From positions 120,258,797 through 120,322,796 of the forward strand of contig NC_068982.1 of assembly GCF_001194135.2 (NCBI RefSeq): 64,000 bases of DNA, written 5' to 3'. Positions within the stretch are counted from its first letter, which is position 1; the number at the start of each line of letters is the position of its first letter. The DNA is from Octopus bimaculoides (taxonomy: Eukaryota). The notes beneath the pieces are model-generated. The model was given only the letters and a program-made list of their open reading frames with translations, was not told the origin of the DNA and searched no databases. Position numbers and translations under genes: made by a program. Of the stretch, positions 15,340 to 64,000 are shown piece after piece.

Positions 15340-15680
15340 TTCAGTCCCACTGCGTGGCATCTTGGGCAAGTGCCTTCTACTATAGCCTCGGGCCGACCAA
15401 TGCCTTGTGAGTGGATTTGGTAGACGGAAACTGAAAGAAGCCCGTCGTATATGTGTATATATATGTGTATGTGTGTGTTTGTATGTCTGTGTTTGTCCCC
15501 CCAACATCGCTTGACAACCGATGCTGGTGTGTTTATGTCCCCGTAACTTAGTGGTTCGGCAAAAGAGACCGATAGAATAAGTACTAGGCTTCCAAAGAAT
15601 AAGTCCTGGGGTCGATTTCTTCGACTAAAGGCGGTGCTCCAGCATGGCCGCAGTCAAAAGACTGAAACAAGTAAAAGTGT
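15340..15680 (+). mobile_element. SINE family B
   Basis: Near-complete copy after the gap. Confidence 0.85.
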
Positions 15681-20375: not shown

Positions 20376-20704
20376 CAGACAGACAGATATATAGATATAG
20401 ATATATACATTCGCAAATGCATATGTGCATAGATTACATACATATACTAATATATGCAAGTATATGTATATGTGTAAATTCATACTTGGGAGACTAACAA
20501 ACAAAAGGTAATTATTTTACCAAACATAACTGTTTTGCTTCAGTGCATTCAATAGATCTAATTGCAACTTAAAATAAATACTCCTTAACAGTAGAATGCA
20601 ATAAATTTAGCATTCATGATTTCCGTCTTTAATATCTACATTTAAATTTATCCTCCTGAGTCACTTAACTTAGATTTAAATTTCCGCACCATTTTGCAGG
20701 TGTT

Positions 20705-20789
20705 ATGGTAATGGGTGCCAAGAAAATGTCTACCATTGTTTCCATGGTAATTTTCGCAAGCTGGTTTCTCTGCAACAAGTTTATTGATG
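20705..20789 (+). CDS. Exon: signal peptide [28 protein letters not shown](A)
   Basis: Acceptor attttgcag ends 20699, ATG 20705, donor G|gtaagt at 20790. Basic N-region, hydrophobic core and an I-D-A cleavage-like end; phase 1 matches the LDLa exon. Confidence 0.8.
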
Positions 20790-21030
20790 GTAAGTTAGCA
20801 TGAAAATAGTGATAGTCCACTAAATGTGATGTTTATATGTATGTAATATTATAGAGACTGTCTTAATGTACGTACTGTCTTTATGTGCATGTGTGTATAT
20901 GTTTTTACATCAAATCACAGCAAACTACTTTTATCGAAGATTGCATAGTTTGTTCAGTGTTTTTTCCCTAATGATTAATTTAATAGCATACATAGCTCAA
21001 TGACAATACTGTCAATATATATATATATAA

Positions 21031-21071
<41 letters not shown>

Positions 21072-24000
21072 NNNNNNNNNNNNNNNNNNNNNNNNNNNNN
21101 NNNNNNNNNNNNNNNNNNNNNNNNNNNNNNNNNNNNNNNNNNNNNNNNNNNNNNNNNNNNNNNNNNNNNNNNNNNNNNNNNNNNNNNNNNNNNNNNNNNN
21201 NNNNNNNNNNNNNNNNNNNNNNNNNNNNNNNNNNNNNNNNNNNNNNNNNNNNNNNNNNNNNNNNNNNNNNNNNNNNNNNNNNNNNNNNNNNNNNNNNNNN
21301 NNNNNNNNNNNNNNNNNNNNNNNNNNNNNNNNNNNNNNNNNNNNNNNNNNNNNNNNNNNNNNNNNNNNNNNNNNNNNNNNNNNNNNNNNNNNNNNNNNNN
21401 NNNNNNNNNNNNNNNNNNNNNNNNNNNNNNNNNNNNNNNNNNNNNNNNNNNNNNNNNNNNNNNNNNNNNNNNNNNNNNNNNNNNNNNNNNNNNNNNNNNN
21501 NNNNNNNNNNNNNNNNNNNNNNNNNNNNNNNNNNNNNNNNNNNNNNNNNNNNNNNNNNNNNNNNNNNNNNNNNNNNNNNNNNNNNNNNNNNNNNNNNNNN
21601 NNNNNNNNNNNNNNNNNNNNNNNNNNNNNNNNNNNNNNNNNNNNNNNNNNNNNNNNNNNNNNNNNNNNNNNNNNNNNNNNNNNNNNNNNNNNNNNNNNNN
21701 NNNNNNNNNNNNNNNNNNNNNNNNNNNNNNNNNNNNNNNNNNNNNNNNNNNNNNNNNNNNNNNNNNNNNNNNNNNNNNNNNNNNNNNNNNNNNNNNNNNN
21801 NNNNNNNNNNNNNNNNNNNNNNNNNNNNNNNNNNNNNNNNNNNNNNNNNNNNNNNNNNNNNNNNNNNNNNNNNNNNNNNNNNNNNNNNNNNNNNNNNNNN
21901 TTTATTTTATTATAAATACAAAACAACACCACAAGCACCTCCTGAGATTCGTTTTCCATACAGTTTGTGCGATTCTTTGTTTACTCATCTACGGTACACT
22001 ATGTATTTTCTTTTAATATATTTTAATTAATGTGTCATAAATGCAGTACTGTACTGTATTTTTATTTATTAATTTATTAATTTTTAGGCTTGAAAATGCT
22101 TATTTTACCACAGAAATGATAAAAAGCTGAAAAAGCATAAATATCCATCGGCCGCAGAAACCTGCGATATACCGAGGAATCCACGATATAAATTTACATA
22201 TATTAGCCAGAAAAATCTGCGATGTGCTGAGAGTGCGATAGGCGAACCGCGATATAGCAAGTGATTAATGTACATATGAAAGGAACGAAATATATCTCAC
22301 TTTGTACGACTTTTAGAATATATTCTGTGTTTAGTGCCAAAAGTCTTACTGATGTCAGATATACTGTGCTCCATACCAAATCAATTTTGACAATTAAATT
22401 GAAAAGAAACACTTAAAAGGGGCTGGAATTTTACATACAAATAAATTTGACTGTCACATATCGACTATGGTGAGTTGGAAAATGTCATTCAATTAGCTTT
22501 ATCTTAACAGTTAGAAGAGAAAAACTTCTAAATCTAAAATCAGAAAGTAAGTGGAATAACTTTAATAAGATTTGCTCGTCAAAGTTTATGGAAACATTAG
22601 ACAATGAAGATCAAAATTAATCTGAAAAGCTACCCAGAGAAAGCATGTATATGTTTTCTCTTATTGAAACTCTCTGAAGTTAAATAAAACAATGACAAAA
22701 ATAAAAGAAATCACTACATATGAAATACAAAGAGCATAGAGTGACAGTAATCATCAGTAATAATTTGATCATCAGTCTACGCACTAAATCACTCATAATG
22801 TTGATAATCTGCACACTGAACAAACATAGAGTAGATGTCGCACAATTTGAACAATGGTAGTGTCTTTAGGTTCTTCGCGGCTCGTTTTCAAGTCAAAATG
22901 TCTGCAATCTCGGGTTAGAATTGATTATATCACATAAACCTTTATATTCATTCAACGTTTAGTCCTTATCTATGAAATCATTGTCAGTTGTGGACGTTTA
23001 TAAGCTTTACGCTACTGTTTTTGTCTCTCTATATTCATGGATTGCGCTGCTACTCTTAATTTTCTTGCAAACTGATGAGATGCAATGACATATTTGATGT
23101 GTTTCCTGAAGATGAAACTCAAACATATTGAGTAACCACACTCCTGAGCATTGTGCTGTGCACTGGGTTAAAGCGTTTGTCCAGTCACTTACTCATGTTT
23201 ACCTATATCTTCACTACCTTGCCACACCACCTTTATTTACCGCATAGATGGCAGCAATACACTGTTTCTAAGCATAGCTAATTATTCCAACGCTACAGCT
23301 ATATCCCAAATTTCTGGTTCCAAAATAATAGGCTTGAAGTAGTAACTGTCAAATCCACTTCTTTCTTACAAGCAACACCAGAGAACACCAGACACAGTAA
23401 CAACAATAGCCATCTCCCTTTGTTATTGGCAGCGCCAGAAAATATCGAATATCACCACCACCCCATCACATTCAACAGCGTAAACATATCTCATTAACAG
23501 AAGATAAAAGCACTAAATATTCTTATTACATACCACTCCTTCCTCTAAAGTATCCATAGCACGTATATGTGGCATTGTTAATAAATCGAAAAGATGCGCT
23601 TACTTACAGCACTCATTTGTACCAGATTTGGGCGACAGAAGGATACAATAACGGTGTACAAACTACACGTTCAGGGGTTCTCAACCTTTCTTGTTTTATC
23701 TACGGACCCCTTTGATTACTATCTTATTCTAGTGAACCCCTTTGAATACTATCTTATTCTAGTGGACCCCTATATCCATTCGATGTTTAAAGATTTGTCT
23801 AATAGAAACTTCTTTCAAAACTCCTGTTTTTGTTTTTCACACTCGTGAAGGTTCAACTATGTAAAATGTTATAAAAAGAAACTTAGCTATTTCTTGCAAT
23901 ACATACATCTAAAGCAAAACTTTTCAGAGGCCCTTAAAATACTATTCGGGATCTCCAATTTACTGTTTAGTTATGTGGACCCCATAAGATCTTATATGGA

Positions 24001-24987
24001 CCCCCCAGGAGCCATATGGACATCAGTTGAGAGCTACTGCGTCAGATCTTTCAAGGATTATGCGAGCCTTGTTTAGGCCTCCAATGTTTCCGCCAGAAGT
24101 CACAATAAATTTCAAAACTAAATGTATTTACAATGTCGGAAAAAGTACCTTGCAATACTTATTTCAGATCTGAATTTAAATTTCGTGGAGATCAGCTTTA
24201 CTTTTCATTCTTCTGGGGCTCGTAAACTAAAATGTCAGTCTAGCGTTCTAACATAAATATGTATATGTATATATATATATATNNNNNNNNNNNNNNNNNN
24301 NNNNNNNNNNNNNNNNNNNNNNNNNNNNNNNNNNNNNNNNNNNNNNNNNNNNNNNNNNNTGTGTGTGTGTGTGTGTGTGTTTGTGCGTCTGTGTTTGTTC
24401 CCCCCAACATCGCTTGACAACCGATGCTGGTGTGTTTACGTCCCCATAACTTAGCGTTTCGGCAAAAGAGACTGATAGAAAAGTACTAGGCCTACAAAGA
24501 ATAAGTCCTGGGGTCGATTTGCTCGACTAAAGGTGGTGCTCCAGCATGGCCACAGTCAAATGACTGAAACACGTTAAACAGTTAAACAGTATAAACCTTG
24601 TGCTTCTGTTAAAAAAAACAAAATATGACCTCTCATACTGGGCTCGTTTTCCTGATACTTGGTATCAATGTTCCTACTAGGCCTCTACTTGACTCATTTT
24701 CAATATCTGCTCTCATAAGTCAGTCATTCTACAAATCTATCATTTATTTGACTTATTCTCGAGGTTTCTTCGTACACTTGATTTATGTTTAAATATCTTG
24801 ACTTATTCTCGATATCTACCCTGAGACTGCATTCATTCTCTCAATCTTTCCTCTACATTCATTATATCAATATCAGCCATCGTACCCGATTCGGCATCAG
24901 TAACTGTTTTCTATTTCATTTATTCTTAATATGATTTTGCTACTGCATTTGCAGTTGTTACTGGAGTTGCTGCTGTTGCTGTATTTG

Positions 24988-25034
<47 letters not shown>

Positions 25035-26193
25035 ACTGCTGTTGTTGTTGTTTAGCTCAGGTCACTTTTGTCCACCGTTCCAACCAAAGTCCTTTTAGAG
25101 ATTGAGCTATATATATATTGCCTAGTGTGTTCTTCCAATTTCGAGACGAGTGCAGTTTGAAGAAAACTGTACTCATATTCCTAGCAGACTCAGTGAAGCA
25201 CTTAAATATTCATCTGATGTGTTTACTCAATTATTGAGCATCTTTGGTACATTTTGAACTAATCTGAAGAACTTTACAAAGTGATCAATCAATGAACAGT
25301 ATTTTCAGTTGCTAAAGACGCATCGGTTCTAGAATATTTTAAGTGTTTCGTTGTTTCAAATGAGCAGAGCCTCTAGGGTGACTGTTCTTTTCTGTTTTTT
25401 CACATGTAGCAACAGGTAGTCTCTACGTGGTTACTTTACCTGCTCAATCTCCCACAAATTGCAACATACTGTCCAAGGGAAGAATGTATTGGCTTAAATA
25501 GCCTGTTATACTATCTCATTTGAAGTTTACATGATCACAGCTGGAATTTCTATATGCATAAGTTTGCTTAAACAGAGCTAACCAGAGGTTAAATAACCAC
25601 AACAAGTAAAATATTAATATGAAAGTATTTGCTCGTAATATCCTCTAATTAATTCTATTCACATGCCAAATATAAACTATATTGACATGATCTTGAAGCC
25701 GTCTTATTTCACTTGGATTGCTAACGGACAAGAGAGAGACATCAGCAATATACAACTATATTTCTTGATCTTGAGAGAAGAAGAAATAATGTTCTAGGAT
25801 TGACTCTTTGTTTAAAAGAGAGGAAGCATGTTTTTTGCCAATGCGTGTGTAGGGCCTAATACATTGATTGAAAAAATTACTTTTCCCTTAGATGAAAAAA
25901 GTCAGTCTCAAAACATCTGACTCCGTTTTTCCACGTCATACAAACTTATACAAAAACAGGAATTTCACTTTATAGTTTTACCGATGCAGACAACTAGCAC
26001 CGGTTTCGTTTGCCATGTTTGTTACATTTTTTTGCTCGCTAAAACTCTGCCATTTAGGTATTTCTTGCCTTCGACAATCATACCAAATTAAGGATAACTA
26101 ATCTTGCACAGTATTATAACCATTACCAATTCGTCTATGGGAATTGTTGTTGTTGAGCCCAGGTCAGCCCTAATTGAGCTTAATCAAAACACG

Positions 26194-26264
<71 letters not shown>

Positions 26265-53507: not shown

Positions 53508-56500
53508 CAAAGAGCGAGAGAGAGAGAGAAAGATCATACAAAATATCATATAAATTTTCTTATAATAAGTAAATAAATATCAATTAAAAATTATTTCACA
53601 TTATGTAAAATTTAGATTTCTTCACTTATATCTTGCAGGCGAAATACAAAAGCGAAATTATATACATTATTTTTTAAATTATATATATGTTATAATAGAC
53701 TACATTATGTATCTTTTATGTTGTATTACACCGTATTAAATTATAGTATATTACTTAAATAAATATATATTTTACATATATAATATACTTTATATTTTAT
53801 TATACTATTGCATATAAATATATTATAGTTTGGATTTTTTGGTTACATAGACTATGAAGATAAGTGGGTCTAACATAGACCCTTGGGGACTGATAGTAGG
53901 CTTGAGTGGATTCCATCGATCACAATAAGATGGTTTCTATTCACCTGGAAATACCTGATCCAGTGCAACAATTTTCTACTGGCTTCAGTGTAGGATAGCT
54001 TTTGTTGTAGGACGTTGTGGCCGACTCTTCTTGAACCGCCCTCCAAAATTCTAAGGATGTCCTCGACGTGATACGTTAGGCATTCACTGCCGCAGCGAAA
54101 GCTATGCTGCTTGGAATTTAGGAGGATGTTACCCTCTAGGAAAGTAATTATTTTTTATCTTACCATCCTTTCAAATACTCTGATGGTTGGGAAGTGAGTG
54201 AGATTGGAAGATAGTTAACTGCAAATAAACTGTTTCCTTTTTCGAAAACTGGGATAGCAGATTAAGATAAGAACTATTTGGGTTTATCACCCGAGTTTAA
54301 AGATTTTCTCCATTGTTTGATAAGAGGAGATGTAAGTTAGTGTTCGCATTCCTTCGGAATACTAGCAGAGTATCTATCATGGCCTACTGCAGAATAATAT
54401 TTCGTTTCGTTTATTGCTACAACGATGTCTGCGACACTGAAACTTATATCAGAGAAACTATGTTGTGAATTGATTTCATTGAAATATACGTAATTCTATA
54501 AACAAATATTACATTACGCAGTATATTCTCTGGATATCATGTTTTCTATTGAATATTCTACTCTATTTTCCAGATATTTGATTAACAACAAGATTAGCTC
54601 CATCGAACCAAATTCCTTCGACGCGTTGACTCAGCTACAAAATCTGTAAGCAATCACTCTTTGACCGTTTCTTACGTTCTTCAGGTTGATGAACTTTGTA
54701 CTGTTATGGTTGTTATTGATGTAGATATTTTATTCATTATTTTATAAATAGCTATTATTTTGATATCTTTGCTGACATTATACTTATTACTGTTGTTGTT
54801 GTTGTTATTATTTTGGGTATCATTATTATTGTTATTGGTGTAGTTATTGTTTGTACAGCAACTGATGAGGATGAGGATTAGGATAATGACGACGGTAACA
54901 ACGACGACGACAGTGATGAAAAAGAGAAATAGAAGGCTGTTAGTTGTTGGATGGTAGTGGTTGCCACTTTAAACCGTTTCGTTTACATTACTGAATGACT
55001 AGCATAAATTTCATAAATATATAAAAATTAACACTTCCTTCTCCAAGCCTAGATTCGAAACCGAATCTAAGAATTCTCGGTCGTCCAAACCACCACAATC
55101 AACAGGCGCGAATACAGGTTTTCTTTGTCCTGTTAAAAAGTGATTGATGATCTCCCTTTAACCTTCGACCTCATAGATGTCAAGCGAAGTTCAAATGGAC
55201 AGGAGCTGACCTATTTAGGTACAAACTCTGCTGACCTGAAGACTGCATATGTTCGTGTGTGTGTGTGTGTGTTTGTTCGTTCTTTCATCTTGAAGGGCAC
55301 GGCAAAAGATTTCTGTCTGATAGTAGCAGAGCACTGGTTCAGTCTGCGAGCATCACAGTCTCCGTCTGTCTGTGTCTGTCCTGGTGTGTTGTTGACCACT
55401 CTATTTATAAGAATCGTGGCAGCTAGAAGGACAGACATACTGCAGCAGAGTTTGTACCTAAATAGGTCAGCTCCTGTCCATTTGAACTTCGCTTGACATC
55501 TATGAGGTCGAAGGTTAAAGGGAGATCATCAATCACTTTTTGACAGGACAAAGAAAACCTGTATTCGCGCCTGTTGACTGTGGTGGTTTGGACGACCGAG
55601 AATTCTTAGATTCGGTTTCGAATCTAGGCTTGGAGAAGGAAGTGTTAATTTTTGCCAATACTTCACTCACCCCGCCTAAATTTGTTTTTACATTCATCAA
55701 AATTTAGTTTTATCACTGAATTTCTATTACTACTTACCATTCATTTAATTATCTTTCAATTAACATTATCCCTGTTATAATCGGAGGATTTGGAAATTGA
55801 TTAGTACCTCTAATATTAGGAGCTCCACACATGGCATTCCCACAAATAAATAATATGAGTTTTTGACTCTTAGCTCCTTCTCTAAGCCTATTATTATCAT
55901 CAGCTTCAGTAGAAAGAGGTGTAGGAACCGGAGGAACTATTTAGCCTCTCCTTTCAAAACAATTTAGCTTACGTAGGCTCTTCTGTTGACTTGGCTATTT
56001 TTTCACTCCATTTAGCAGGTATTTCAAAAATTCTTGGAGCTATTAATTTCATCACAACTATAATTAACATACGACTAGAAGGTATATTAATAGAACAACT
56101 CCATTTATTTATATTATCTGTTTTCATTACTGCAATTTTTTATCGTTTTTCTTCGATTACTATAATCATTAAACTGTCATTATCATTATTATCGATATTA
56201 ATAAAGCGACGTTCTGGCAGAGTTATTAGCACGCCGGCTAAAATGCTTACCGGCTTTTTTTCCAGTTCCTCTGTTCTGAGTTCAAATTCCACCGAGGTCG
56301 ACTTTGCTTTTCATCCTTCCGGAATCAAAAAACAAAGGTACTATTTGAGCACTAGGGTCGATATAATCGACTTATCCCTCCTGTCAGAATTGTTGGCTCG
56401 GCCTTATGCCAAAATTAGAAAGGATTGCTATTATCAGTAAATCACAATTAACATTTACTTTTTGTTACTCTAATCAATAAATTACAGTTACCATGAATTA

Positions 56501-59500
56501 TTCGTAACTGCTTTCGGTAAATTCCAATTACCACTTCCTATATATTACTATCTACAATAAATTGCTATTCATATTTTCTCATTTAATACTGTTATCATTA
56601 TACTTTTATCATTTGCCACGATTTACTTTTATTATCAAATTGCTATTATCTCTAACTCTCGACATTCTGTTTTTGTTTGTTATTTTTATTCGCGGTTTTA
56701 TGCATAGATTTTCCCACTCGTATTATTTTTCACGTAGATATTTTGCCGCCGCTGTGTTTCTCAGCAGTCTTCAACAATAATAATGACAGTAATTAACATC
56801 TATTTTCCTAACAGCATACACATGTCTCCAAAATAAAACTGTGTTTATCTTTTCCAGATATTGTTTGCACTGTTTGTGTCATTTAAAAAATTTTCAATAC
56901 ACATATTTAGAAATTTTCTTTTGTGTGTTTATTTACGTTTCGTGAAGTCATGGAAACCTATTTATATACAGCTGACAATCGACAGTCATATTATAGTGCA
57001 GGCAATATAAAGCATTGCATGTATTGTTTATAACTGTGCTGTAGGTGTATGATCACCATGAAAGATCACCAGAGATACTAAGTCCTGACATTTATAGTAA
57101 GATCGAAAGATTTAGAGCATTGTTCCTTCTCAACGGTGTATTGTTATTGTTGTTATTTAGCCTTGATCGAGCAGTCCTATGATCAAATGTATTTCAGTTA
57201 TGACCAACCCATCTTATTATATAGCTAGGAGTATATTGCCCAGTGTGTTCTTCTCTTTTAAATATAGTAGGGCATGAACTGAGGAACATTTGGCTACTAT
57301 TTCTTTCAAGTAGAACAACTAAGTAGAGTTTCAGGTGCTTTATTGATAACTGAAATGTTTTTAAATGTTTTTAATTCATTAGTGAATATTTTTTCTTCAC
57401 TTCTACAGAATATTGCGACAAAACAGATTTACTAAATTGGTTAACGGAATGTTCGCTGGATTAAAATCCATCCAATATCTGTAAGTACCAAAACATAAAC
57501 ATCATTATACTGCACAGAAATGAAGTGCCTTTAATTCTTAGTTGAAACCATTTCATTTTGTTTATATTGCCGCTAATATCCTTGAGAAAACCTGAATGTC
57601 AAGGCAACCCTATTCCTTTGCCAAATACTAGAAGTACAAAAGACGTTATATAGATACCTATTTTATCTTTCTACTTATCATTGACTGTGCCTAGGAATAA
57701 AGACCAGTCTCAGATGCCCTTATTTTGTGTCTTATCATGGACGCTGGCCAGGAAGCAAAACGTAAAGAAACAGCTTTCAGCAACGCAATTCACATACTTC
57801 TAAAGGAACCAAGAAGTGGGTCCCTGCATACTTGCTCCGTCTGGTGACAATTTCCCTCAGACCACTTTCTACATGTTAGAAAAGAACACATTAAATAATG
57901 AGATCATGGCTCATAGGAAAAAGACGTGATACTTGCAGTTGAAATGCTTTTGCTGATAAGATTTGCAAATCAGAAAGGATCTAACCGTAAGCAGCAACAA
58001 AAACAATTTAATTGTAAGCGAGAACAACAGTAATAAACGAGTGAATATTTGTTTTATCATTTTGGGTTGGCTTCATTTACATTTATAAAACCGTGTATCT
58101 TAACAGCAACCATAGTATAGGAGGCTTTTGAGTATTTAGCACAAAGCCATGAATTTGTGGAGGAAGCGAAAATAAGACTGTGATTTTTATACATTTATCG
58201 AGGGTAATAATGGCATAAGTGAAGCGAATTAACTATAACGTGGCGTTAAAATGATCTGGTTTTTACCTCTATCTTATTCTACTTTATATGTCATATTTTT
58301 CTATACTTTATTACTTTGCAGCTTTTCACATTTCTAACTAAGAGCTTACAGTTTAAGCAGAATTTATAAATTTCTGGACGAAATGGTTTGCAGTTTCAAA
58401 TTCCGCCAGATAGACTTTACCACGACCCCCTCCATAATTTACCATTAGTATTAACAGAATATATAAAATTATCAATGTCAATGATCTGATCCAAGGTGCA
58501 TAGCACAATATACATGTTTAGAAATCATTATTTAGTTTCACACCTTTACCTTTCCATCAATTAACCTTGTTGTTCATCCCTTTGAATTGATAAATTAAGC
58601 ATTAGTAATATACTGTGGTTCAATGTCATTGACTATACGCTGCCCTCTATATATGGGGCAATATACCGGTATACGAAATCAACAATCATCTAGCTCCTAA
58701 AAATATGATTACAAATTTCCAGTGTTCATTATCGCTAACATCTATTCTGTTATCGAAAACAAACTACTCTTTGTCATATCATTTCTACCATATACCATAT
58801 CACATTAACGTAAATACTAATAAAACCTTTTGGTACTATCGATGTTACAATGGCATCATTGGTGATGAAAGCTTCAATAATCCTTATCTTTTTATTGTGC
58901 TGCAAAAAGGAATACTACATGTAATTTCCAATGTTTCTTCCACTGCATCTTATAGGAGTATCACAAAACTAATGACTGCTTGATCAGCTAGAATGTATGA
59001 GTTAAAGCCCTCCTTAGATCTGGGACACCATAGAAACAGTCACCTTAATTTGATCAGTCCTAATTACATACTAATTTCCTCTCTCATCCATTAATCTACC
59101 CTATATCAAGTTCAGTAATACACTAAATATTTGCAGTTCGTCGTTTTGTCGTATGACTCCCCTCTGCATTCATACACGCACGCACACACACACACACACA
59201 CACATACATACACTCACAGGAACACAAAACACATGCACACACGCGCACACACACACACATACAAGTCAAAATGGAGGTTTATTTCTGTAGTCGCTCGTCC
59301 AGCTAGTAATTCCAGAGAAATCCCCCTAAGTTAGCATTATTATATAAAAGCTAAACGTAGAAAAATACAGTTCCAGATATATATCTGATAAAAGAAAGAA
59401 TGTTCGCTACAGGAACGCATTCAATCATAACTCTTCATAATTAAAACTGACCCGTGGCTAAACAATAACAAATCAGTATATCTTGTTTCTATCACCAACA

Positions 59501-61023
59501 CGGTTAGTTATTCTGTTACAAAAGCGACACATCCTTCAGAGCCAACGTAGTTGCCAAATTCTTTCTAATCTCTATAATGCTGCACGGCTTCATGCTGTCA
59601 CGAATGCTTTTAAATTCTTTGTTGTAAAGGTTGTAGCCAACATTGCTTTATATTTCTTTCCTTGCTGCAGGAATTTGGAAGAAAATCAAATTGAACACAT
59701 TGAAGAGAAATCCTTTATGTATGTTGAAAACCTAATTTCACTGTACGTAACCATTTACAATTATTTTATACACCCTGTTAAGTAGTTTTCTATGGCTACT
59801 ACAGGTCTGCACAAATTTCATCATGCTTACTCTGTGTGTACGTGTGTATTCATATACATATATAAATATATACATACATGCATACATGCATTCATACGTA
59901 TACACACGCGCGCGTGCACACACAACTACACACAAACACAGACACACAAACAAACACACATCTAGTTCATCTACGCGAGATATTTAATTACCGAAAATAT
60001 ATTTTAAAAATCGACAGTTAGTCGGTACTTTGAAACACGCATACATGTATATATGCATATATACATACGTATATATAAATATATTCAAACATATTCTTAT
60101 ACATAAACATATAGTAATGAAAGTGTTGTAAAATATATTTAAATATATTTTACGTAGTTCAAACAAAATGTGAAACTGGATTATAATACGCTAGATAGAA
60201 TGGATAGATATGTCTACTGTAAGAAAAAGTTGGCCTCCTACACAGAATTTCTCTCTGGAGTGAACTATTCAGGAGTGCGGAATGGGGAAAAATTGTTTTC
60301 AGTTTATATAAAAGTGTATTAACATTGAATGAAGGTGTTGGAGTTCGGGCAATATATGCCTTTGAAAAGTAATTTAAAGAAGTAGAAATTATAGAAAGTT
60401 ATTTTTAAAATGTAAGTATGAATGACTTGTAACATTCCGTAAAACATCCAAGATTGCACTCGATTGATTTACTTTAATAGGAAAGTTACATTATAGCAGT
60501 GGTTCTCAACTGGGAGCCAACTGTCCCTTGGGGATCTATGTAATATTTTGTTGTTAAAATTTATGAGCAATAAATTGGCTATACACAAAATATTTTAACA
60601 ATTTTTTTAATACTAATATTTAATTATAAAAATATATGATTATTTTTTAAACACTAAATGCCTCTGAGGGTCCAGTAGAGTAAAATAGGAATCAAAGGAA
60701 GTTCATAATAAATGGTTGAGAATTATTGTATTATAGGGTATAACTTTGTACAAACACCAATGGCAGGTCTAAACTGATAATTGTTTGAAAAAAGTTAAAT
60801 TTTATGACTGTGTAATTATTGAAGTAAAGAGGTCATTTTTCTGAAAAACTAAGGTTAGGTTATACTGACTTGCGTTCACAACTATTTCCACGATTAAACT
60901 ATTTTCCCTGTGAAATAAATAAAGAAAATACCTTTATATACAAACAAATGACGTTAAAATGCAAGCATTTGAAAAAAAATCCACACAGGGAAAAGTAGAT
61001 TTAAATTTGCCGTACTTAGTAAA

Positions 61024-61081
<58 letters not shown>

Positions 61082-61402
61082 CCTTGTACGTTTCGACGCA
61101 TGAGGATGTAATAGTTCGGTCAAGTACCTAATGCTCGTGTTTCTGGAAAAGTATCAAGACAGCTCGCGATTTAAAACCTACAGCAATTTTCACACATCAC
61201 TGCACAGCCAGAGTAACCTAATGATAAACTGAGCGCAAATTTATGCTTTCATCTGTTCAAATATGTGACGATGTACCAATGTTACAAATCAATACATTTT
61301 TTTTAATGCGGTATTTCAATATCAATACAGCTATCTGGCAGACAATCCCTTCAGAACGATGCCTCCGAATACATTGAAAGGTCTCATAAATTTGAAGTTC
61401 AT
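20705..61402 (+). CDS. RXFP1/2-like: Spliced 5'-partial CDS (14 exons) of an LDLa + LRR G-protein-coupled receptor ectodomain, type-C1 LGR (relaxin-family receptor RXFP1/2, Lgr3/Lgr4-like); gene continues past the window
   Basis: Exons 20705-20789, 31048-31224, 39761-39847, 41516-41612, 43998-44069, 45790-45861, 49108-49179, 49646-49717, 51806-51877, 52976-53047, 54574-54645, 57409-57480, 59671-59742 and 61331-61402 all have AG/GT boundaries, matching phases (1,1,1, then 2) and join into one open frame. Architecture is SP-LDLa-linker-LRRNT-10xLRR. The LDLa segment [17 protein letters not shown] resembles RXFP1 CSLGYFPCGNITKCLPQ (recalled sequence). The 7TM is not in the window, so GPCR status is inferred from architecture. 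Confidence 0.9.
21901..22272. mobile_element. pogo/Tigger-like element end
   Basis: Repeated (c)gcgata subterminal motifs ending gaaccgcgatatagcaagtgattaatg|ta. Confidence 0.45.
22760..23500 (-). mobile_element. Possible piggyBac transposase 3' remnant
   Basis: Decayed Cys-rich C-terminus RDCRHF...[16 protein letters not shown] and a weak N..MG motif upstream. Confidence 0.3.
23672..24039. mobile_element. hAT MITE, same family as 60497-60728 in opposite orientation
   Basis: TIRs caggggttctcaacc / cagttgagagctactg; internal ~30-bp tandem duplication (ccctttga.tactatcttattctagtg); TSD not recognisable. Confidence 0.65.
24360..24580 (+). mobile_element. SINE family B 3' half
   Basis: Same 3' core as 15480-15680. 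Confidence 0.85.
26265..26420 (+). repeat. Dispersed repeat (second, inverted copy at ~30770-30905)
   Basis: gtattagtttaacgctcgggaa..gagaaagtctttgacgtttcgagcc..cgctcttcaac matches the reverse complement of 30800-30870. Confidence 0.75.
26490..30152 (-). mobile_element. Tc1/mariner-superfamily DD41D (rosa-type) transposon, decayed and interrupted by a nested element
   Basis: Transposase pseudo-CDS about 30043 to 28964 ([14 protein letters not shown]..., TVWCAVS, NDGA-41 [31 protein letters not shown]). Inverted termini aaaacggaaacttttgaaatacc (~26503) and ggtatttcaaatgttaccgtttt (~30129). Left end TA|TAGGGTG; right end cut by a SINE. Confidence 0.85.
26598..28944 (-). mobile_element. Chapaev3-like (CMC superfamily) transposon, decayed, nested in the DD41D element
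   Basis: Pseudo-CDS about 28562 to 27022 with [47 protein letters not shown] and RFHQDI..M..R.QG...MLDDYCWSL motifs. Degenerate TIRs tactggtcagcaaa / tttgttgaccagct with TAA on both flanks. The family name comes from recalled motifs. Confidence 0.75.
30150..30360 (-). mobile_element. SINE family B 3' half, abutting the DD41D terminus
   Basis: ttacttgtttcagtca...ggccatgctgg...tcgacccaggacttattctttgtaagcctagtac. Confidence 0.85.
31048..31224 (+). CDS. Exon: LDL receptor class A module ([59 protein letters not shown])
   Basis: ttttaag|ct acceptor, tgtg|gtaagt donor, 177 nt, phase 1-1. Six Cys in LDLa spacing with the DGSDE acidic motif. Confidence 0.95.
31320..31790. repeat. ~470-bp (CAT)n/(CAC) trinucleotide array
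   Basis: Directly visible; source of the poly-Ser and poly-Met ORFs. Confidence 0.95.
32805..33358 (+). repeat. Copy 1 of a ~550-bp inverted duplication
   Basis: Reverse-complement match to 36056-36600, including a perfect 39-mer (32921-32959 vs 36450-36488). Confidence 0.9.
34675..35096 (-). mobile_element. Two tandem SINE family A copies
   Basis: Two copies of atcgaccccgaaaggatgaaaggcaaagtc.acctcg.cggaatttgaactcagaa. Confidence 0.85.
35325..35750 (-). mobile_element. SINE family B, full length
   Basis: Reverse complement of the head (cacagccacgcctgc, ~35740) and tail (tttacttgtttcaatcat, ~35340). Confidence 0.85.
36056..36600 (-). repeat. Copy 2 of the inverted duplication
   Basis: See 32805-33358; the paired ORFs both contain ...[11 protein letters not shown]... 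Confidence 0.9.
37410..39130 (-). mobile_element. hAT (hATm/hAT19-like) transposase remnant
   Basis: ORF 38637-38999 has LPTYKDVLK and SIPCV..I..KI, followed by LFDISCC.C...C.C. A weaker downstream frame [22 protein letters not shown] lies at ~37500-37640. Confidence 0.5.
39761..39847 (+). CDS. Exon: LDLa-LRR linker ([29 protein letters not shown])
   Basis: gtgtttcag|at acceptor, acag|gtaatt donor, 87 nt, phase 1-1, open frame. D-x2-W-x3-aromatic spacing parallels the RXFP1 linker motif GDxxGWxxxF. Confidence 0.85.
41516..41612 (+). CDS. Exon: LRR N-terminal cap ([33 protein letters not shown])
   Basis: tatag|at acceptor, tt|gtaagt donor, 97 nt, phase 1 to 2. CxC..C..GLxxIPxxIP LRRNT pattern. 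Confidence 0.92.
42500..42850 (-). mobile_element. RTE-clade LINE 3' remnant
   Basis: [13 protein letters not shown]...[15 protein letters not shown].....[10 protein letters not shown]. Confidence 0.7.
42925..43100 (+). mobile_element. SINE family B 3' half
   Basis: catcgcttgacaaccgat...ggcggtgctccagcatgg. Confidence 0.8.
43215..43430 (+). mobile_element. SINE family A
   Basis: Full head-core-tail match to 91-495. Confidence 0.85.
43998..44069 (+). CDS. LRR exon 1 ([24 protein letters not shown])
   Basis: 72 nt, phase 2-2, ctgcag| and |gtaagt; xLxxNxIxxLxxxxFxxxxxLxxL consensus. Confidence 0.93.
45790..45861 (+). CDS. LRR exon 2 ([24 protein letters not shown])
   Basis: 72 nt, phase 2-2, ttccag| and |gtgagt. 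Confidence 0.92.
46577..47047 (-). mobile_element. Tandem dimer of SINE family A bounded by three copies of gttgaattgataatatt
   Basis: Units ~46595-46803 and ~46822-47027; the flanking 17-mer occurs at 46577, 46806 (variant) and 47031. Confidence 0.8.
48433..48900 (+). mobile_element. SINE family B, full length
   Basis: Head, (GT)n and tail in order. Confidence 0.85.
49108..49179 (+). CDS. LRR exon 3 ([24 protein letters not shown])
   Basis: 72 nt, phase 2-2, gatcag| and |gtaagt. Confidence 0.9.
49646..49717 (+). CDS. LRR exon 4 ([24 protein letters not shown])
   Basis: 72 nt, phase 2-2, tttcag| and |gtgagt. Confidence 0.93.
49900..50946 (+). mobile_element. L1/Tx1-like LINE 3' fragment
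   Basis: RT motif [22 protein letters not shown]-terminal [13 protein letters not shown]; pyrimidine-rich 3' UTR ending aataaa before a (TAG)n run. Confidence 0.65.
50947..51013. repeat. (TAG)n microsatellite
   Basis: Directly visible, between the LINE 3' end and a SINE. Confidence 0.95.
51014..51515 (+). mobile_element. Two SINE family A copies (51014-51225, 51378-51515)
   Basis: Head and core motifs as at 91-495. Confidence 0.85.
51806..51877 (+). CDS. LRR exon 5 ([24 protein letters not shown])
   Basis: 72 nt, phase 2-2, long CT tract then catag|, donor |gtatgt. Confidence 0.93.
52976..53047 (+). CDS. LRR exon 6 ([24 protein letters not shown])
   Basis: 72 nt, phase 2-2, ttacag| and |gtaagt. 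Confidence 0.93.
53850..54400 (-). mobile_element. CR1/L2-type reverse transcriptase remnant
   Basis: NYLPISLTS and [15 protein letters not shown] motifs in decayed frames. Confidence 0.6.
54574..54645 (+). CDS. LRR exon 7 ([24 protein letters not shown])
   Basis: 72 nt, phase 2-2, ttccag| and |gtaagc. Confidence 0.93.
55032..55644. mobile_element. Young non-autonomous foldback/MITE-like DNA element: 202-bp terminal inverted repeats, CAC...GTG termini, TTAA flanks
   Basis: Arms 55032-55233 and 55443-55644 are reverse complements with 2 mismatches; 209-bp spacer; TTAA at 55028-55031 and 55645-55648. Confidence 0.85.
55765..56140 (+). pseudogene. cox1: NUMT: nuclear copy of a mitochondrial cox1 fragment
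   Basis: With the invertebrate mitochondrial code it reads PVMIGGFGNWLVPLMLGAP.MAFP.MNNMSFWLL.PSL...VESG.GTG and [28 protein letters not shown] sits at the Trp positions. An in-frame TAG at 55942-55944 and a 1-nt insertion near 55960 disable it. Confidence 0.95.
56205..56420 (+). mobile_element. SINE family A
   Basis: ctggcagagttattagcacgccggc...gagttcaaattccaccgaggtcgactttgc. Confidence 0.8.
57409..57480 (+). CDS. LRR exon 8 ([24 protein letters not shown])
   Basis: 72 nt, phase 2-2, ctacag| and |gtaagt. Confidence 0.93.
59671..59742 (+). CDS. LRR exon 9 ([24 protein letters not shown])
   Basis: 72 nt, phase 2-2, ctgcag| and |gtacgt. Confidence 0.92.
60497..60728. mobile_element. hAT (Charlie-type) MITE
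   Basis: TIRs cagtggttctcaact / ggttgagaattattg; 8-bp TSD CATTATAG / TATTATAG. Confidence 0.75.
61331..61402 (+). CDS. LRR exon 10 ([23 protein letters not shown]...)
   Basis: 72 nt, phase 2-2, atacag| and |gtaagt. Confidence 0.9.
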
Positions 61403-61599
61403 GTAAGTACTAGAATTTAACTGGCAACAATTTCAGTTCATTATATTCAGATACAATTCTTCAGATGCATTCATTTTATTGATATAAAATTATTGGTATT
61501 TCTTAATATTTTTCTTTTTGGACTGTTTAACCCATGCCTTTCATTCGTCAGGACTGGGAAAATTATCAGAGATATAGAGAAATTATGGTATACTCACGG

Positions 61600-62950
61600 T
61601 TATGATTATTATTATTGAGCTTTTCTTCTTTCAACTTTGTTACCATTTCTTGCCGAGAGTCTTCCCGACACCTAAGGTAAAGAAACTCCCTGTAAATACT
61701 GATAAGCTATGAAAATAAACACACCAGATTGTTTATTTACAAAATCAAATGAAGTCATTTATAAAAGATAAATTACTTGGATGGTAAACGTTCTCACAGC
61801 GACAGTGCTTTCCTCAATACGTCTAACAATCTTTCTCTCATCTTGCCGGAATGGTAAGACAGAGATCATTTTCAGATAATTTCCAGTTCATTTCTTCATA
61901 TATCATTCCTAGTGTTCCTACAATCACTGGTATTGTAACCGCCTTGAGATGCGACATTTTCGATTTCAATGAGAAAATCTTTTGCTTGGACTTTTTGTTG
62001 CAGTGTTTCTTTTGCTGAAAGCAGTTCTTCTCTTGGCGAGAATCTATATTTTCTCTTCATCTTACTTCCTTTTCTGTCTTTTTACATTGTTTCTACAGAT
62101 TAGTTCATATAATATTGATATTTCACCTCTCATTATTTCAATCTCTTTTCCAGTTTGGAATTCTTCTCAGGTTAGTATTTCTTTGTTTTTGCAGGGCATA
62201 CAACTGGTTTCAATTTTCTTAGCAGCTGCGTAAATAATTTCATTTAATTCAGTGAGATCTGGTTTTAGTTCTTGTATAGTTTCCTTTGTTATATAGTTAG
62301 TTTAATTTTTTTTCTATTTTGGATTGTATTTGAAAGCTTATGAAGTGGCTCTGTATCATGCATATCAGTGTATCTTACAAATGCAAGCTTATTCAGGATT
62401 TTCTGCTTCAGTTCTATCATAGACTCTCAGTGTTCCTCAGTAAGTGTGTTGTCTTCAAATATTGTTTCTCTACCACTTTCCCCGCTATCTTTATCAGGTT
62501 CGTTACAATTTATTTCTCCAGACGTTTGCGTGCTCCGGTCAGATTGCAGTCTTTCAATTGAGACTTGTGGAGAGTTGCTCTCTTCGTCTGGTTCTTCATT
62601 TCTTTGTTGTCTTATATTTAGGTCATTTTCCACTGCGCACTTGATTGCAGTTATTTCACTATCTGTGAGTCTTTTATTTCTGAGGATATCCCTCCTAACA
62701 TTTGCTAACTTGTTTTTGTCCAAATACAGTTTGCTGTCTTGATTTCGTGTTCGCCATATTTTAGTGTGTTTCTCTTCAGATGGCCTTCCTAATGCATAGA
62801 AATAGGCGCATATTAATTCTGTATACTCTTCTCAGGTTCATTTGATCGTCTTGCATTTTTCTTTCTGTGGTAGGTGTGGTGGTAGACTTCAAGGGCTTGA
62901 GTTGGGGCAGTTCCCGTTCAAGTGACCATCCAGGTTTGTATTCAGAGAAG
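61600..62950 (-). mobile_element. Dong/R4-like ORF N-terminal remnant
   Basis: DKNKLANVRRDILRNKRLTDSEI (ORF 62427-62723), typical of R4/Dong N-termini; K/E-rich downstream frames with stops. Confidence 0.55.
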
Positions 62951-63649
62951 CGTTTGTGCCAGTGGATGACTTTTCAACACTAGGTTGGCTCTCTCCTGAG
63001 GGACGTGCTTCCAGATTAATCATAGGACAAGCGATTTGGTGTACTGTTGTAGTTTTCCTTTGTGTTTCGTTAGACAGAGTTGTGTACATTAAAATTATTA
63101 GTATTGAACCCTGTATTGTGACAGATGTAGAAACGGTTGTTGTCTCTGACACTACTGTCGACTCTGCCGTTATGTTACTTTAATCTTGCTATTAAAGCAT
63201 TGCTCATCATTAGTTACCACTAATTGTGCTTTGATCTGTATAGTTGTGGCTAACCTTTGTAGCCATGGTGACAGTATAGCCATTATTTATTTAAATCTGC
63301 CACCTTTGCTACTACTACTGTGTGGTATTATTAAATGTTGCTTAGTTCAACTTTTGTCTTATACTTGAGGTAATCATTAATATGTGAGGGTTGAAGGGAA
63401 TAGTAAGTAGGAGGTAGAGGAGCAGCCTTTTGAATAGACCAAATACCACAGGTATGTAAATAGATTCGGCAGATGGCGAGGAGATCAGCAATGGACATTC
63501 CTGTGCGATAAGGAGACAAAAGAGGCCTTACACCCTTGTGGTCAGCAGAGGTCAATGTGTTTACTACTAGTAGTGATCAGTGAGAGTGCTGATCTTGGCC
63601 TTGAAAAGAACCAATTCACCCTGTTCTATTTTTAATTAATGATAGAAAA

Positions 63650-63692
63650 CAACAACAACAACATCAACAACAGCAACAACAACAACAACAGC

Positions 63693-63776
<84 letters not shown>

Positions 63777-64000
63777 TAATTCGTTTTATTGGCCACAAGG
63801 GCTAATATCAATTAAAAACATATAAGGACAAAGACAGGACGAAGGTTACAAAAGGTTTTGTCCGAAAAGGTAGGAAAGTTCGTCTAAACAGAGGAAGAAA
63901 ACGGAGAAAGATATAATAAATAAATAGATAAATAAATAAGTAGAACTCCCAAAGGGGGAGGCGCTTCGAAAAAGGAAAGGTTACACGTGGAAAAACCCAT
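63650..64000 (-). mobile_element. (AAC)n(AAT)n tail plus probable 3' end of a non-LTR element
   Basis: Trinucleotide tail 63650-63780 abutting a purine-rich (+ strand) tract like a reverse-oriented LINE/SINE 3' UTR. Confidence 0.35.

What the first reader, a model, noticed from the sequence alone, without database searches (positions are those of the whole stretch)
20705..61402. Hidden octopus relaxin-family (type-C1 LGR) receptor spread over 41 kb
Seen: 14 short exons with canonical splice sites join into one 388-codon open frame (SP, single LDLa, linker, LRRNT, 10 LRRs); the ORF track shows only fragments of it. Established: a single N-terminal LDLa plus about 10 LRRs defines RXFP1/RXFP2 and fly Lgr3/Lgr4, whereas molluscan GRL101-type receptors carry many LDLa repeats. 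Lgr3 responds to the insulin/relaxin-like peptide Dilp8. Inference: this is a cephalopod receptor for a relaxin/gonadulin/Dilp7-like peptide, a signalling axis whose ligand and function in octopus I cannot identify from this window. It is a candidate for growth or reproductive-timing control.
Basis: partly seen in the sequence, partly recalled or inferred. Interest (0 to 1): 0.75.

Follow-up and report, generated by a model that had tools for sequence, protein, structure and literature searches.

The report
Octopus relaxin-family receptor gene, already annotated
The window holds the first 14 coding exons of a real octopus hormone-receptor gene of the relaxin-receptor family, but public databases already list it as 'relaxin receptor 2' and it sits on the fly-Lgr4 branch, so the finding is correct but ordinary.

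Summary
It is 100% identical to residues 1-388 of NCBI XP_052821512.1, 'relaxin receptor 2 [Octopus bimaculoides]' (762 aa; earlier XP_014780264.1). All assembly gaps lie in introns. The gap-free O. sinensis orthologous locus has the same 17 coding exons, one LDLa and ten LRR exons, so the gaps hide nothing. The missing half exists: exon 15 (hinge plus TM1-TM6) lies 22.6 kb past exon 14, outside the window, followed by exons 16 and 17. The Pfam 7tm_1 match has E=2.4e-29, and the closest solved structure by sequence is human RXFP1. On full length the protein falls in the Drosophila-Lgr4-type (dilp7-receptor) branch of type C1 with 96.6% bootstrap support. It is excluded from the RXFP1/2-Lgr3 branch and from GRL101. 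The diagnostic introns agree: none in TM2 or TM5, and a phase-0 intron after the TM7 exon. dN/dS against O. sinensis is 0.15. 'Type-C1 LGR' is therefore right and 'hidden' is wrong. The nearest analogy is Lgr4/Dilp7, not Lgr3/Dilp8. A candidate ligand, octopus ILP7 (XP_014782891.1), is already in the literature. A 2025 LGR survey did not list this gene for octopus, and its function is untested.

The parts
20705..20789 (+). Coding exon 1 (85 nt): ATG plus signal peptide, [28 protein letters not shown]; donor GTAAGT, ends in phase 1
   Evidence: It is the best SP-like ATG..GT phase-1 candidate in the readable sequence of 1-31 kb. It matches the start of XP_052821512.1 and is conserved in O. sinensis.
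31048..31224 (+). Exon 2 (177 nt, phase 1-1): the single LDLa module, with 6 Cys and [16 protein letters not shown]
   Evidence: Pfam Ldl_recept_a at 5e-8 for residues 52-87. It is the only LDLa signature in the window and in the gap-free O. sinensis locus.
39761..39847 (+). Exon 3 (87 nt, phase 1-1): linker [29 protein letters not shown], with the Lgr4-type W-N-x-L-aromatic-x-K-R-x-D-E motif and the first Cys of LRRNT
   Evidence: and the exact RefSeq match.
41516..41612 (+). Exon 4 (97 nt, phase 1 to 2): LRRNT cysteine cap [14 protein letters not shown] and the start of LRR1
   Evidence: tblastn with the Elysia LGR4-type protein gives 5e-4.
43998..44069 (+). Exon 5: LRR1 (72 nt, phase 2-2)
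45790..45861 (+). Exon 6: LRR2 (72 nt, phase 2-2)
49108..49179 (+). Exon 7: LRR3 (72 nt, phase 2-2)
49646..49717 (+). Exon 8: LRR4 (72 nt, phase 2-2)
51806..51877 (+). Exon 9: LRR5 (72 nt, phase 2-2)
52976..53047 (+). Exon 10: LRR6 (72 nt, phase 2-2)
54574..54645 (+). Exon 11: LRR7 (72 nt, phase 2-2)
57409..57480 (+). Exon 12: LRR8 (72 nt, phase 2-2)
59671..59742 (+). Exon 13: LRR9 (72 nt, phase 2-2)
61331..61402 (+). Exon 14: LRR10 (72 nt). Its donor GTAAGT splices to exon 15, which lies 22.6 kb downstream and outside the window. In window-equivalent coordinates exon 15 is 84042-84880 (hinge plus TM1-TM6), exon 16 is 85753-85973 (TM7) and exon 17 is 87851-87913.
   Evidence: the downstream exons were mapped on locus L001.

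Best explanation
Window 20705-61402 is the 5' part (coding exons 1-14 of 17) of the Octopus bimaculoides gene that NCBI calls 'relaxin receptor 2' (XP_052821512.1, 762 aa). The window corresponds to GCA_001194135.2 CM046602.1, about 120258797-120322796.

[quoted passage not shown] Within C1 it belongs to the branch defined by Drosophila Lgr4, the 'dilp7 receptor', which is unrelated to vertebrate LGR4. The shown anatomy is: signal peptide, one calcium-binding LDLa module, a short linker, an LRRNT cap, a ten-repeat LRR arc with one repeat per 72-nt exon, a cysteine hinge with GDGLSS, and a rhodopsin-type 7TM with DRY, CWxP and NPxxY.

The mechanism is inferred by homology with RXFP1/2 and fly Lgr4. 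An insulin/relaxin-superfamily peptide would bind the concave face of the LRR arc. The most likely ligand is the octopus Dilp7-type peptide ILP7 (XP_014782891.1). The LDLa module and linker would then act on the 7TM bundle as a tethered activator, and the receptor would signal through Gs to raise cAMP. Ligand, coupling and physiological role are untested.
For: Exon model. Domains. Residues 1-388 are 100% identical to XP_052821512.1, and the cluster includes the O. sinensis and O. vulgaris orthologues. The locus is identical to the window at a constant offset. The full 17-exon structure is mapped. Pfam 7tm_1 covers residues 439-696 at 2.4e-29.

For the hinge plus 7TM, the best PDB hit is human RXFP1 7tmw at 5.7e-70, against TSHR at 3e-38 and vertebrate LGR4 at 2e-15. 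The AF2 model (pLDDT 76) shows an LRR arc plus seven helices, and its Foldseek matches are full-length LGRs.

In the full-length NJ tree the Lgr4-type clade including octopus has 96.6% support, the RXFP/Lgr3 clade has 100% without octopus, and the C2 split has 100%. Ectodomain profile scores are 338.6 bits for Lgr4-type, 240.0 for RXFP/Lgr3 and 224.1 for GRL101. The linker motif is shared only with Lgr4-type receptors.

The gene structure has no intron in TM2 or TM5 and a phase-0 intron after the TM7 exon. These are the Lgr4-type diagnostics of PMC11863921. dN/dS against O. sinensis is 0.146 overall, 0.33 for the ectodomain and 0.07 for the 7TM half. O. bimaculoides has a Dilp7-type precursor gene, and Dilp7-type and LGR4-type genes co-occur across phyla (PMC11863921).
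Against: Nothing contradicts the gene identity. The weak points are as follows. The 7TM half lies outside the window. No RNA-seq junction evidence was available here; the protein is a RefSeq XP_ (predicted) record. On the ectodomain alone the tree is poorly resolved, with 34% support for the lophotrochozoan Lgr4 grouping and 12% of bootstraps placing the model next to C2. My trees are distance (NJ) trees, not ML. The Dilp7-Lgr4 pairing is described as indirect even for Drosophila (PMC11863921). Gs coupling and the LDLa tethered-agonist mechanism are transferred from RXFP1/2 from my own knowledge.
Confidence: 0.93

Rival explanations
1. It is an RXFP1/RXFP2/Lgr3-type receptor, that is, a relaxin/Dilp8/gonadulin receptor. 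This is what the NCBI name 'relaxin receptor 2' and the reader's Lgr3-Dilp8 analogy suggest.
For: It shares the overall architecture of one LDLa plus 10 LRRs. Human RXFP1 is the best solved-structure hit by sequence. Human RXFP2 scores 143 bits on the ectodomain, inside the Lgr4-type range.
Against: The Lgr3-plus-octopus clade appears in 0% of full-length bootstraps and 0.4% of ectodomain bootstraps. The profile score is about 100 bits lower than for Lgr4-type. The TM2 and TM5 phase-1 introns are absent. The linker lacks the GDxxGW..F motif. PMC11863921 found no RXFP/LGR3-type receptor in molluscs. PDB holds no Lgr4-type structure, so the RXFP1 hit only shows type C.
Confidence: 0.03
2. It is a GRL101-type (type C2) receptor whose additional LDLa exons are hidden in the N gaps of introns 1-2.
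For: The gaps in introns 1-2 total about 1.8 kb and could physically hold a 120-nt exon. In 12% of ectodomain bootstraps the model sits next to C2.
Against: The gap-free O. sinensis locus has one LDLa-like ORF only. The orthologous proteins are colinear apart from a 2-aa indel and an N-terminal extension in one O. vulgaris isoform. The hinge reads GDGLSS, not the C2 motif DEFSSC. The C2 split excluding octopus has 100% support on full length. Pecten GRL101 runs from its last LDLa straight into LRRNT, without the linker.
Confidence: 0.01
3. The locus is a decaying or truncated copy. It would be either a pseudogene or a secreted LDLa-LRR decoy that ends at the in-frame stop read through the exon-14 donor (..LKFM*).
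For: Reading through the donor at 61403 gives a stop after one codon. Intron 14 is very long, at 22.6 kb with large gaps. I recall that truncated splice forms are known for mammalian RXFP1.
Against: All 17 exons are open, with conserved AG/GT sites, in O. bimaculoides and O. sinensis, and an equivalent protein is annotated in O. vulgaris. dN/dS is 0.15 overall and 0.07 in the 7TM half. The donor is a consensus GTAAGT. A minor truncated isoform cannot be excluded, but it would be an addition to the receptor, not an alternative.
Confidence: 0.03
4. The exon chain is a chance or assembly artefact: LRR-like ORFs strung together across gaps.
For: The scaffold is gap-ridden and AT-rich, with many spurious ORFs.
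Against: Ten exons are exactly 72 nt, all in phase 2, and every junction codon gives Leu or Ile. Pfam LRR_8 scores 4.7e-61. The structure is identical in an independent gap-free assembly.
Confidence: 0

Closest known systems
XP_052821512.1 / XP_014780264.1 'relaxin receptor 2(-like)' [Octopus bimaculoides]; orthologues XP_036356573.1 (O. sinensis) and CAI9716961.1 (O. vulgaris)
   Same: It is the same gene. The orthologues are 95-96% identical and colinear.
   Different: Nothing differs in sequence. The database name points to RXFP2, whereas phylogeny and gene structure put it in the Lgr4-type branch. The older UniProt model A0A0L8GK78 (732 aa) lacks exon 1.
Drosophila Lgr4 and the 'LGR4-type' (dilp7-receptor) clade of type C1, e.g. 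Crassostrea virginica CvirLGR4 and Owenia OfusLGR4 (PMC11863921)
   Same: It has one LDLa and the linker motif W-[ND]-x-[LK]-aromatic-x-K-R-x-D-[EA]. It has 10 LRRs that are colinear with CvirLGR4 (model residues 51-388 against CvirLGR4 25-364). It shares the GDG[IL]SS hinge, lacks TM2 and TM5 introns, and has the phase-0 intron after the TM7 exon. Clade support is 96.6%.
   Different: Ectodomain identity to other molluscs is only about 31-33%. Octopus has an extra phase-1 intron between TM6 and TM7, whose distribution I did not check. No ligand data exist.
Human RXFP1/RXFP2 and Drosophila Lgr3 (the RXFP/LGR3-type clade of type C1)
   Same: The domain plan is the same and the 7TM is closely related: RXFP1 7tmw matches at 5.7e-70 over the hinge and 7TM. 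The mechanism is presumably also the same, with ligand binding on the LRR arc and the LDLa module needed for activation through Gs/cAMP. That part rests on my own knowledge of RXFP1/2.
   Different: It falls in a separate clade. The linker is different. The diagnostic TM2 and TM5 phase-1 introns are absent. The ligands of this clade are relaxin/INSL3/Dilp8-type peptides, not Dilp7-type.
GRL101 (type C2; Lymnaea, Pecten, insects)
   Same: It is an LDLa plus LRR plus 7TM receptor of type C.
   Different: GRL101-type receptors have 2 to about 12 LDLa modules, fewer LRRs, no linker, and the hinge motif DEFSSC. They form a separate clade with 100% support.

Membership tests
Type C1 LGR (RXFP1/2, Lgr3, Lgr4) | N-terminal signal peptide followed by a single LDLa module (rarely two) | tested here: met
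   Pfam Ldl_recept_a at 5e-8 for residues 52-87. There is one LDLa signature in the window and one in the gap-free O. sinensis locus.
Type C1 LGR (RXFP1/2, Lgr3, Lgr4) | LRRNT cap plus about 10 LRRs | tested here: met
   Ten 72-nt LRR exons, colinear with CvirLGR4 and the Elysia LGR4-type protein.
Type C1 LGR (RXFP1/2, Lgr3, Lgr4) | Type-C hinge and rhodopsin-type 7TM domain | tested here: met
   These are outside the window but in the same gene. GDGLSS is at residue 410. Pfam 7tm_1 covers 439-696 at 2.4e-29. DRY is at 526, CWVP at 655 and NPLIY at 692. RXFP1 is the best PDB hit.
Type C1 LGR (RXFP1/2, Lgr3, Lgr4) | Phylogenetic placement apart from type C2 | tested here: met
   The C2 split has 100% support on full length and 86% on the ectodomain alone.
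Type C1 LGR (RXFP1/2, Lgr3, Lgr4) | Activated by an insulin/relaxin-superfamily peptide; Gs/cAMP signalling | not testable with these tools
   This needs receptor expression and peptide assays.
LGR4-type (Drosophila Lgr4 / dilp7-receptor clade) | Clade membership | tested here: met
   96.6% bootstrap for the clade, and 87% within the lophotrochozoan members. Profile score is 338.6 bits against 240.0 and 224.1.
LGR4-type (Drosophila Lgr4 / dilp7-receptor clade) | Phase-0 intron after the exon encoding TM7; no phase-1 introns in TM2 or TM5 (PMC11863921) | tested here: met
   Exon 15 encodes the hinge through TM6 without interruption. The exon 16/17 junction is phase 0, after residue 742.
LGR4-type (Drosophila Lgr4 / dilp7-receptor clade) | A Dilp7-type peptide gene in the same genome | tested here: met
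   Taken from the literature only: XP_014782891.1 'probable insulin-like peptide 7' is listed as ILP7 for O. bimaculoides (PMC11863921 supplements). The pairing itself is untested.
RXFP1/RXFP2/Lgr3-type | Clade membership | tested here: not met
   The Lgr3-plus-octopus clade has 0% support. The five RXFP/Lgr3 sequences are monophyletic at 100% without it.
RXFP1/RXFP2/Lgr3-type | Conserved phase-1 introns in TM2 and in TM5 | tested here: not met
   TM1-TM6 lie in one 839-nt exon.
GRL101 (type C2) | Multiple LDLa modules abutting LRRNT; hinge DEFSSC | tested here: not met
   There is one LDLa followed by a 28-aa linker, and the hinge reads GDGLSS. Pecten GRL101 was used for comparison.

The most novel reading that the evidence does not exclude
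PMC11863921 reports that molluscs lack RXFP/LGR3-type receptors, yet octopus carries both a Dilp7-type gene (ILP7) and a relaxin-like peptide gene (RLP, XP_014770853.1). This single Lgr4-type receptor might therefore serve both peptides. That would make it the sole GPCR entry point for relaxin-like signalling in cephalopods, for example in optic-gland or gonad control of maturation.
Probability: 0.15. Interest if true: 0.5.

Novelty: already known. Interest (0 to 1): 0.15.

Why it matters
As a discovery it matters little, because the gene model has been in NCBI, UniProt and EukProt for O. bimaculoides and is also annotated in O. sinensis and O. vulgaris.

Two small points are useful.

1. The database name 'relaxin receptor 2' is misleading. 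By phylogeny and intron pattern the gene is the octopus orthologue of fly Lgr4, the proposed Dilp7 receptor.

2. The most recent LGR survey (PMC11863921) listed only a bursicon-type LGR for O. bimaculoides while listing an octopus Dilp7-type peptide. This gene restores the Dilp7/Lgr4 co-occurrence for cephalopods and gives a concrete, testable receptor-ligand pair.

Tried and rejected
1. The first word-index protein search used LDLa plus 8 LRRs. It returned only a mite LRRC15-like protein, and for a while I read this as 'not annotated'. That was a false negative: the full 388-aa query found the identical RefSeq protein. Negative results from that tool should not be trusted. The two control fragments added to (octopus FSHR-like and ILP7) were not among the 120 listed hits either.

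3. The PDB search with the ectodomain alone gave only generic LRR proteins such as IGFALS, LRRC15 and SHOC2, and was not informative.

4. I looked for the next exon in 61403-64000, and ran tblastn of full-length LGRs against the whole window. No hinge or 7TM exon is in the window.

5. The look-up of encoding contigs with the LDLa-exon ORF found nothing on record.

6. The Cvir_LGR4 search listed no cephalopod among its 120 shown hits. The unnamed Logan hits were from ticks, mites and an oyster.

7. The ectodomain-only NJ tree was weakly resolved. It was superseded by the full-length tree.

8. The first tree script timed out.

9. The LRR-like reading at 61414-61479 was considered as an 11th repeat or an alternative exon. 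I rejected it because it is in the wrong phase, ends in a stop, and is not conserved in O. sinensis.

10. Pfam on the intronic minus-strand ORFs gave only sub-threshold hits.


Full report
**Observation.** The window is AT-rich (36% GC) and carries 14 N runs. Working from the sequence alone, I found stop-free + strand segments with LRR motifs. I read their splice sites. I then built a 24-residue HMM from eight of these segments, which recovered two further LRR exons and nothing comparable on either strand. I located the LRRNT exon by its Cys pattern. I located the linker exon as the best phase-1/phase-1 candidate.

- There are 14 exons from 20705 to 61402. Exons 2-14 are preceded by AG and all 14 are followed by GT.
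- The phases on entering the exons are 0,1,1,1, then 2 for all ten 72-nt LRR exons.
- The total is 1166 nt, which is 388 open codons plus two bases.
- Pfam finds LRR_8 at 4.7e-61 and one Ldl_recept_a at 5e-8 for residues 52-87.
- Exon 1 is the best signal-peptide-like ATG..GT phase-1 candidate in the 31 kb upstream of exon 2.

**Gaps.** Nine N runs lie inside the finding's range: the six listed by the scan's program plus 40550-40601, 44358-44527 and 48655-48664. All nine are in introns, and none comes closer than 102 nt to an exon. No reading frame has to be carried across a gap.

Whether a gap hides an exon could not be settled from the window, so I used an independent assembly. The O. sinensis orthologous locus (L002, CM016860.1) has no N at all. 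It has the same 17 coding exons with the same lengths, apart from a 6-nt deletion in exon 2, and all its internal splice sites are AG/GT. A six-frame scan of that locus finds one LDLa-like ORF, and the only LRR-HMM hits at E<=0.5 on the gene's strand are the ten exons. The O. bimaculoides, O. sinensis and O. vulgaris proteins are colinear, apart from a 2-aa indel and an N-terminal extension in one O. vulgaris isoform. The gaps therefore affect only the intron lengths.

**Identity.** My first database search used a partial chimeric query and found nothing close. A 2025 survey of LRR-GPCRs (PMC11863921) lists only a bursicon-type receptor for O. bimaculoides and a GRL101 fragment for Sepioteuthis. 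For a time this made the 'hidden' claim look right.

It is not right. Searching with the full 388-aa model returned XP_052821512.1, 'relaxin receptor 2 [Octopus bimaculoides]', 762 aa, 100% identical over the whole model. The same sequence is also recorded as XP_014780264.1 ('PREDICTED: relaxin receptor 2-like') and in EukProt. A 732-aa UniProt model that lacks exon 1 also exists. The orthologues XP_036356573.1 (O. sinensis) and CAI9716961.1/CAI9716960.1 (O. vulgaris) are in the same 90% cluster.

The genomic locus of that protein is L001, GCA_001194135.2 CM046602.1:120274501-120351709. It is base-for-base the window at a constant offset of 15704, with the same gaps.

**The rest of the gene.** Mapping the protein on L001 gives a single solution that reproduces it:
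- Exon 15 (839 nt) lies 22.6 kb beyond exon 14, at window-equivalent 84042-84880. It encodes the hinge (IHFSVFYTC...GDGLSS) and TM1-TM6.
- Exon 16 (221 nt) encodes TM7 and the start of the tail.
- Exon 17 (63 nt) follows after a phase-0 intron.

This explains why no hinge or 7TM exon could be found inside the window. Pfam 7tm_1 covers residues 439-696 at 2.4e-29. DRY, CWVP and NPLIY are all present.

The hinge plus 7TM half matches human RXFP1 (7tmw) at 5.7e-70. That is far better than the glycoprotein-hormone receptors (about 1e-38) or vertebrate LGR4 (about 1e-15). An AlphaFold2 model (pLDDT 76, pTM 0.66) shows a regular LRR arc followed by seven helices. Its Foldseek matches are full-length LGRs, and RXFP1 is the most identical 7TM at 35%.

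**Subtype.** PMC11863921 divides type C into C1 and C2 (GRL101). C1 contains an RXFP/LGR3 clade and an LGR4 clade, where LGR4 means Drosophila Lgr4, not vertebrate LGR4. The paper also gives diagnostic introns. I used its reference sequences together with database homologues. Five lines of evidence agree.

1. The octopus linker [22 protein letters not shown] aligns with the Lgr4-type motif of oyster, Solemya, Owenia, millipede and fly. It does not align with the GDNNGW..F linker of RXFP1/2.
2. BLAST bit scores for the ectodomain are 106-198 for Lgr4-type, 82-143 for RXFP/Lgr3 and 49-92 for GRL101. The alignment is colinear from the LDLa module to LRR10.
3. Profile HMM scores are 338.6 bits for Lgr4-type (five-member subsets: mean 293, minimum 268), 240.0 bits for RXFP/Lgr3 and 224.1 bits for C2.
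4. The ectodomain-only NJ tree is weak. The full-length tree is much clearer. The Lgr4-type clade including octopus has 96.6% support, and octopus sits within the lophotrochozoan members at 87%. The RXFP/Lgr3 clade has 100% support without octopus, and the C2 split has 100%.
5. The gene structure has no intron in TM2 or TM5, and it has the phase-0 intron after the TM7 exon. These are the Lgr4-type criteria of the paper.

**Function.** The gene is under purifying selection. dN/dS between O. bimaculoides and O. sinensis is 0.146 for the whole CDS, 0.33 for codons 1-388 and 0.07 for codons 389-762. Intron flanks differ at about 12% of sites.

The mechanism is inferred, not shown. By homology, the LRR arc binds an insulin/relaxin-superfamily peptide. 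The LDLa module, with its intact six Cys and D/E calcium cage, and the linker are needed to switch on the 7TM domain. Signalling goes through Gs and cAMP. These points come from my knowledge of RXFP1/2.

For the ligand, the literature states that Dilp7 acts on Drosophila Lgr4, while PMC11863921 itself calls that evidence indirect. [quoted passage not shown] The same paper's supplement lists an O. bimaculoides Dilp7-type precursor (XP_014782891.1) and a relaxin-like precursor (XP_014770853.1). Octopus ILP7 is therefore the most likely ligand, at perhaps 50-60%.

**Verdict.** It is wrong on 'hidden' and should be refined to Lgr4-type.

I found no paper in the searchable library that reports or tests an octopus relaxin-family receptor, and the 2025 survey did not list this one. 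The remaining value is a naming correction and a ready receptor-ligand pair to test. Novelty: already known. Interest: low.

Noticed in passing
window 61414-61479 (+): Eleven nt after the exon-14 donor, a different frame reads NLTGNNFSSLYSDTILQMHSFY*. This resembles LRR10 of oyster LGR4 (FRSLYKDTLRSLPSLHY). It is in the wrong phase for splicing, ends in a stop, and is further broken in O. sinensis. It is either a decayed exon duplicate or chance.
   Followed up: partly
window 20692-20704: An acceptor-like TTTTGCAG sits 5 nt upstream of the start ATG and is conserved in O. sinensis. This suggests that an upstream 5'UTR exon splices in here. One O. vulgaris isoform (CAI9716960.1) has a 34-aa N-terminal extension with no counterpart in the window.
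   Followed up: partly
all 14 N runs of the window, e.g. 21072-21900, 39649-39658: Eleven of the 14 gaps are flanked on at least one side by TA, TG or TC dinucleotide microsatellites, so the assembly broke at simple repeats. The chromosome-level record GCA_001194135.2 still carries the same gaps.
   Followed up: yes
L001 45699-68337 (intron 14, beyond window end): Intron 14 is 22.6 kb in O. bimaculoides, but about 8.5 kb of it is N (runs of 5309, 748, 2099 and 371). The O. sinensis intron is 9.6 kb. The estimated gap sizes may inflate the O. bimaculoides length.
   Followed up: no
window 36641-36752 and 39170-39281: Two copies of a roughly 112-nt interspersed repeat, 96% identical, lie in intron 2. 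A partial third match is at 15425-15470. The element is probably SINE-like.
   Followed up: partly
window 27022-30101 (-) and 5680-5925 (-): Decayed transposon ORFs lie in intron 1. They look transposase-like, with only a sub-threshold DUF4817 HTH hit. A reverse-transcriptase fragment lies upstream (RVT_1 at E=3.8e-4, below the Pfam cut-off).
   Followed up: partly
PMC11863921, Dataset S5/S6: The 2025 LGR survey lists only LOC106873188 (bursicon-type) for O. bimaculoides, although XP_014780264.1 existed. Octopus is thus an unreported case of Dilp7-type peptide and LGR4-type receptor occurring together.
   Followed up: partly
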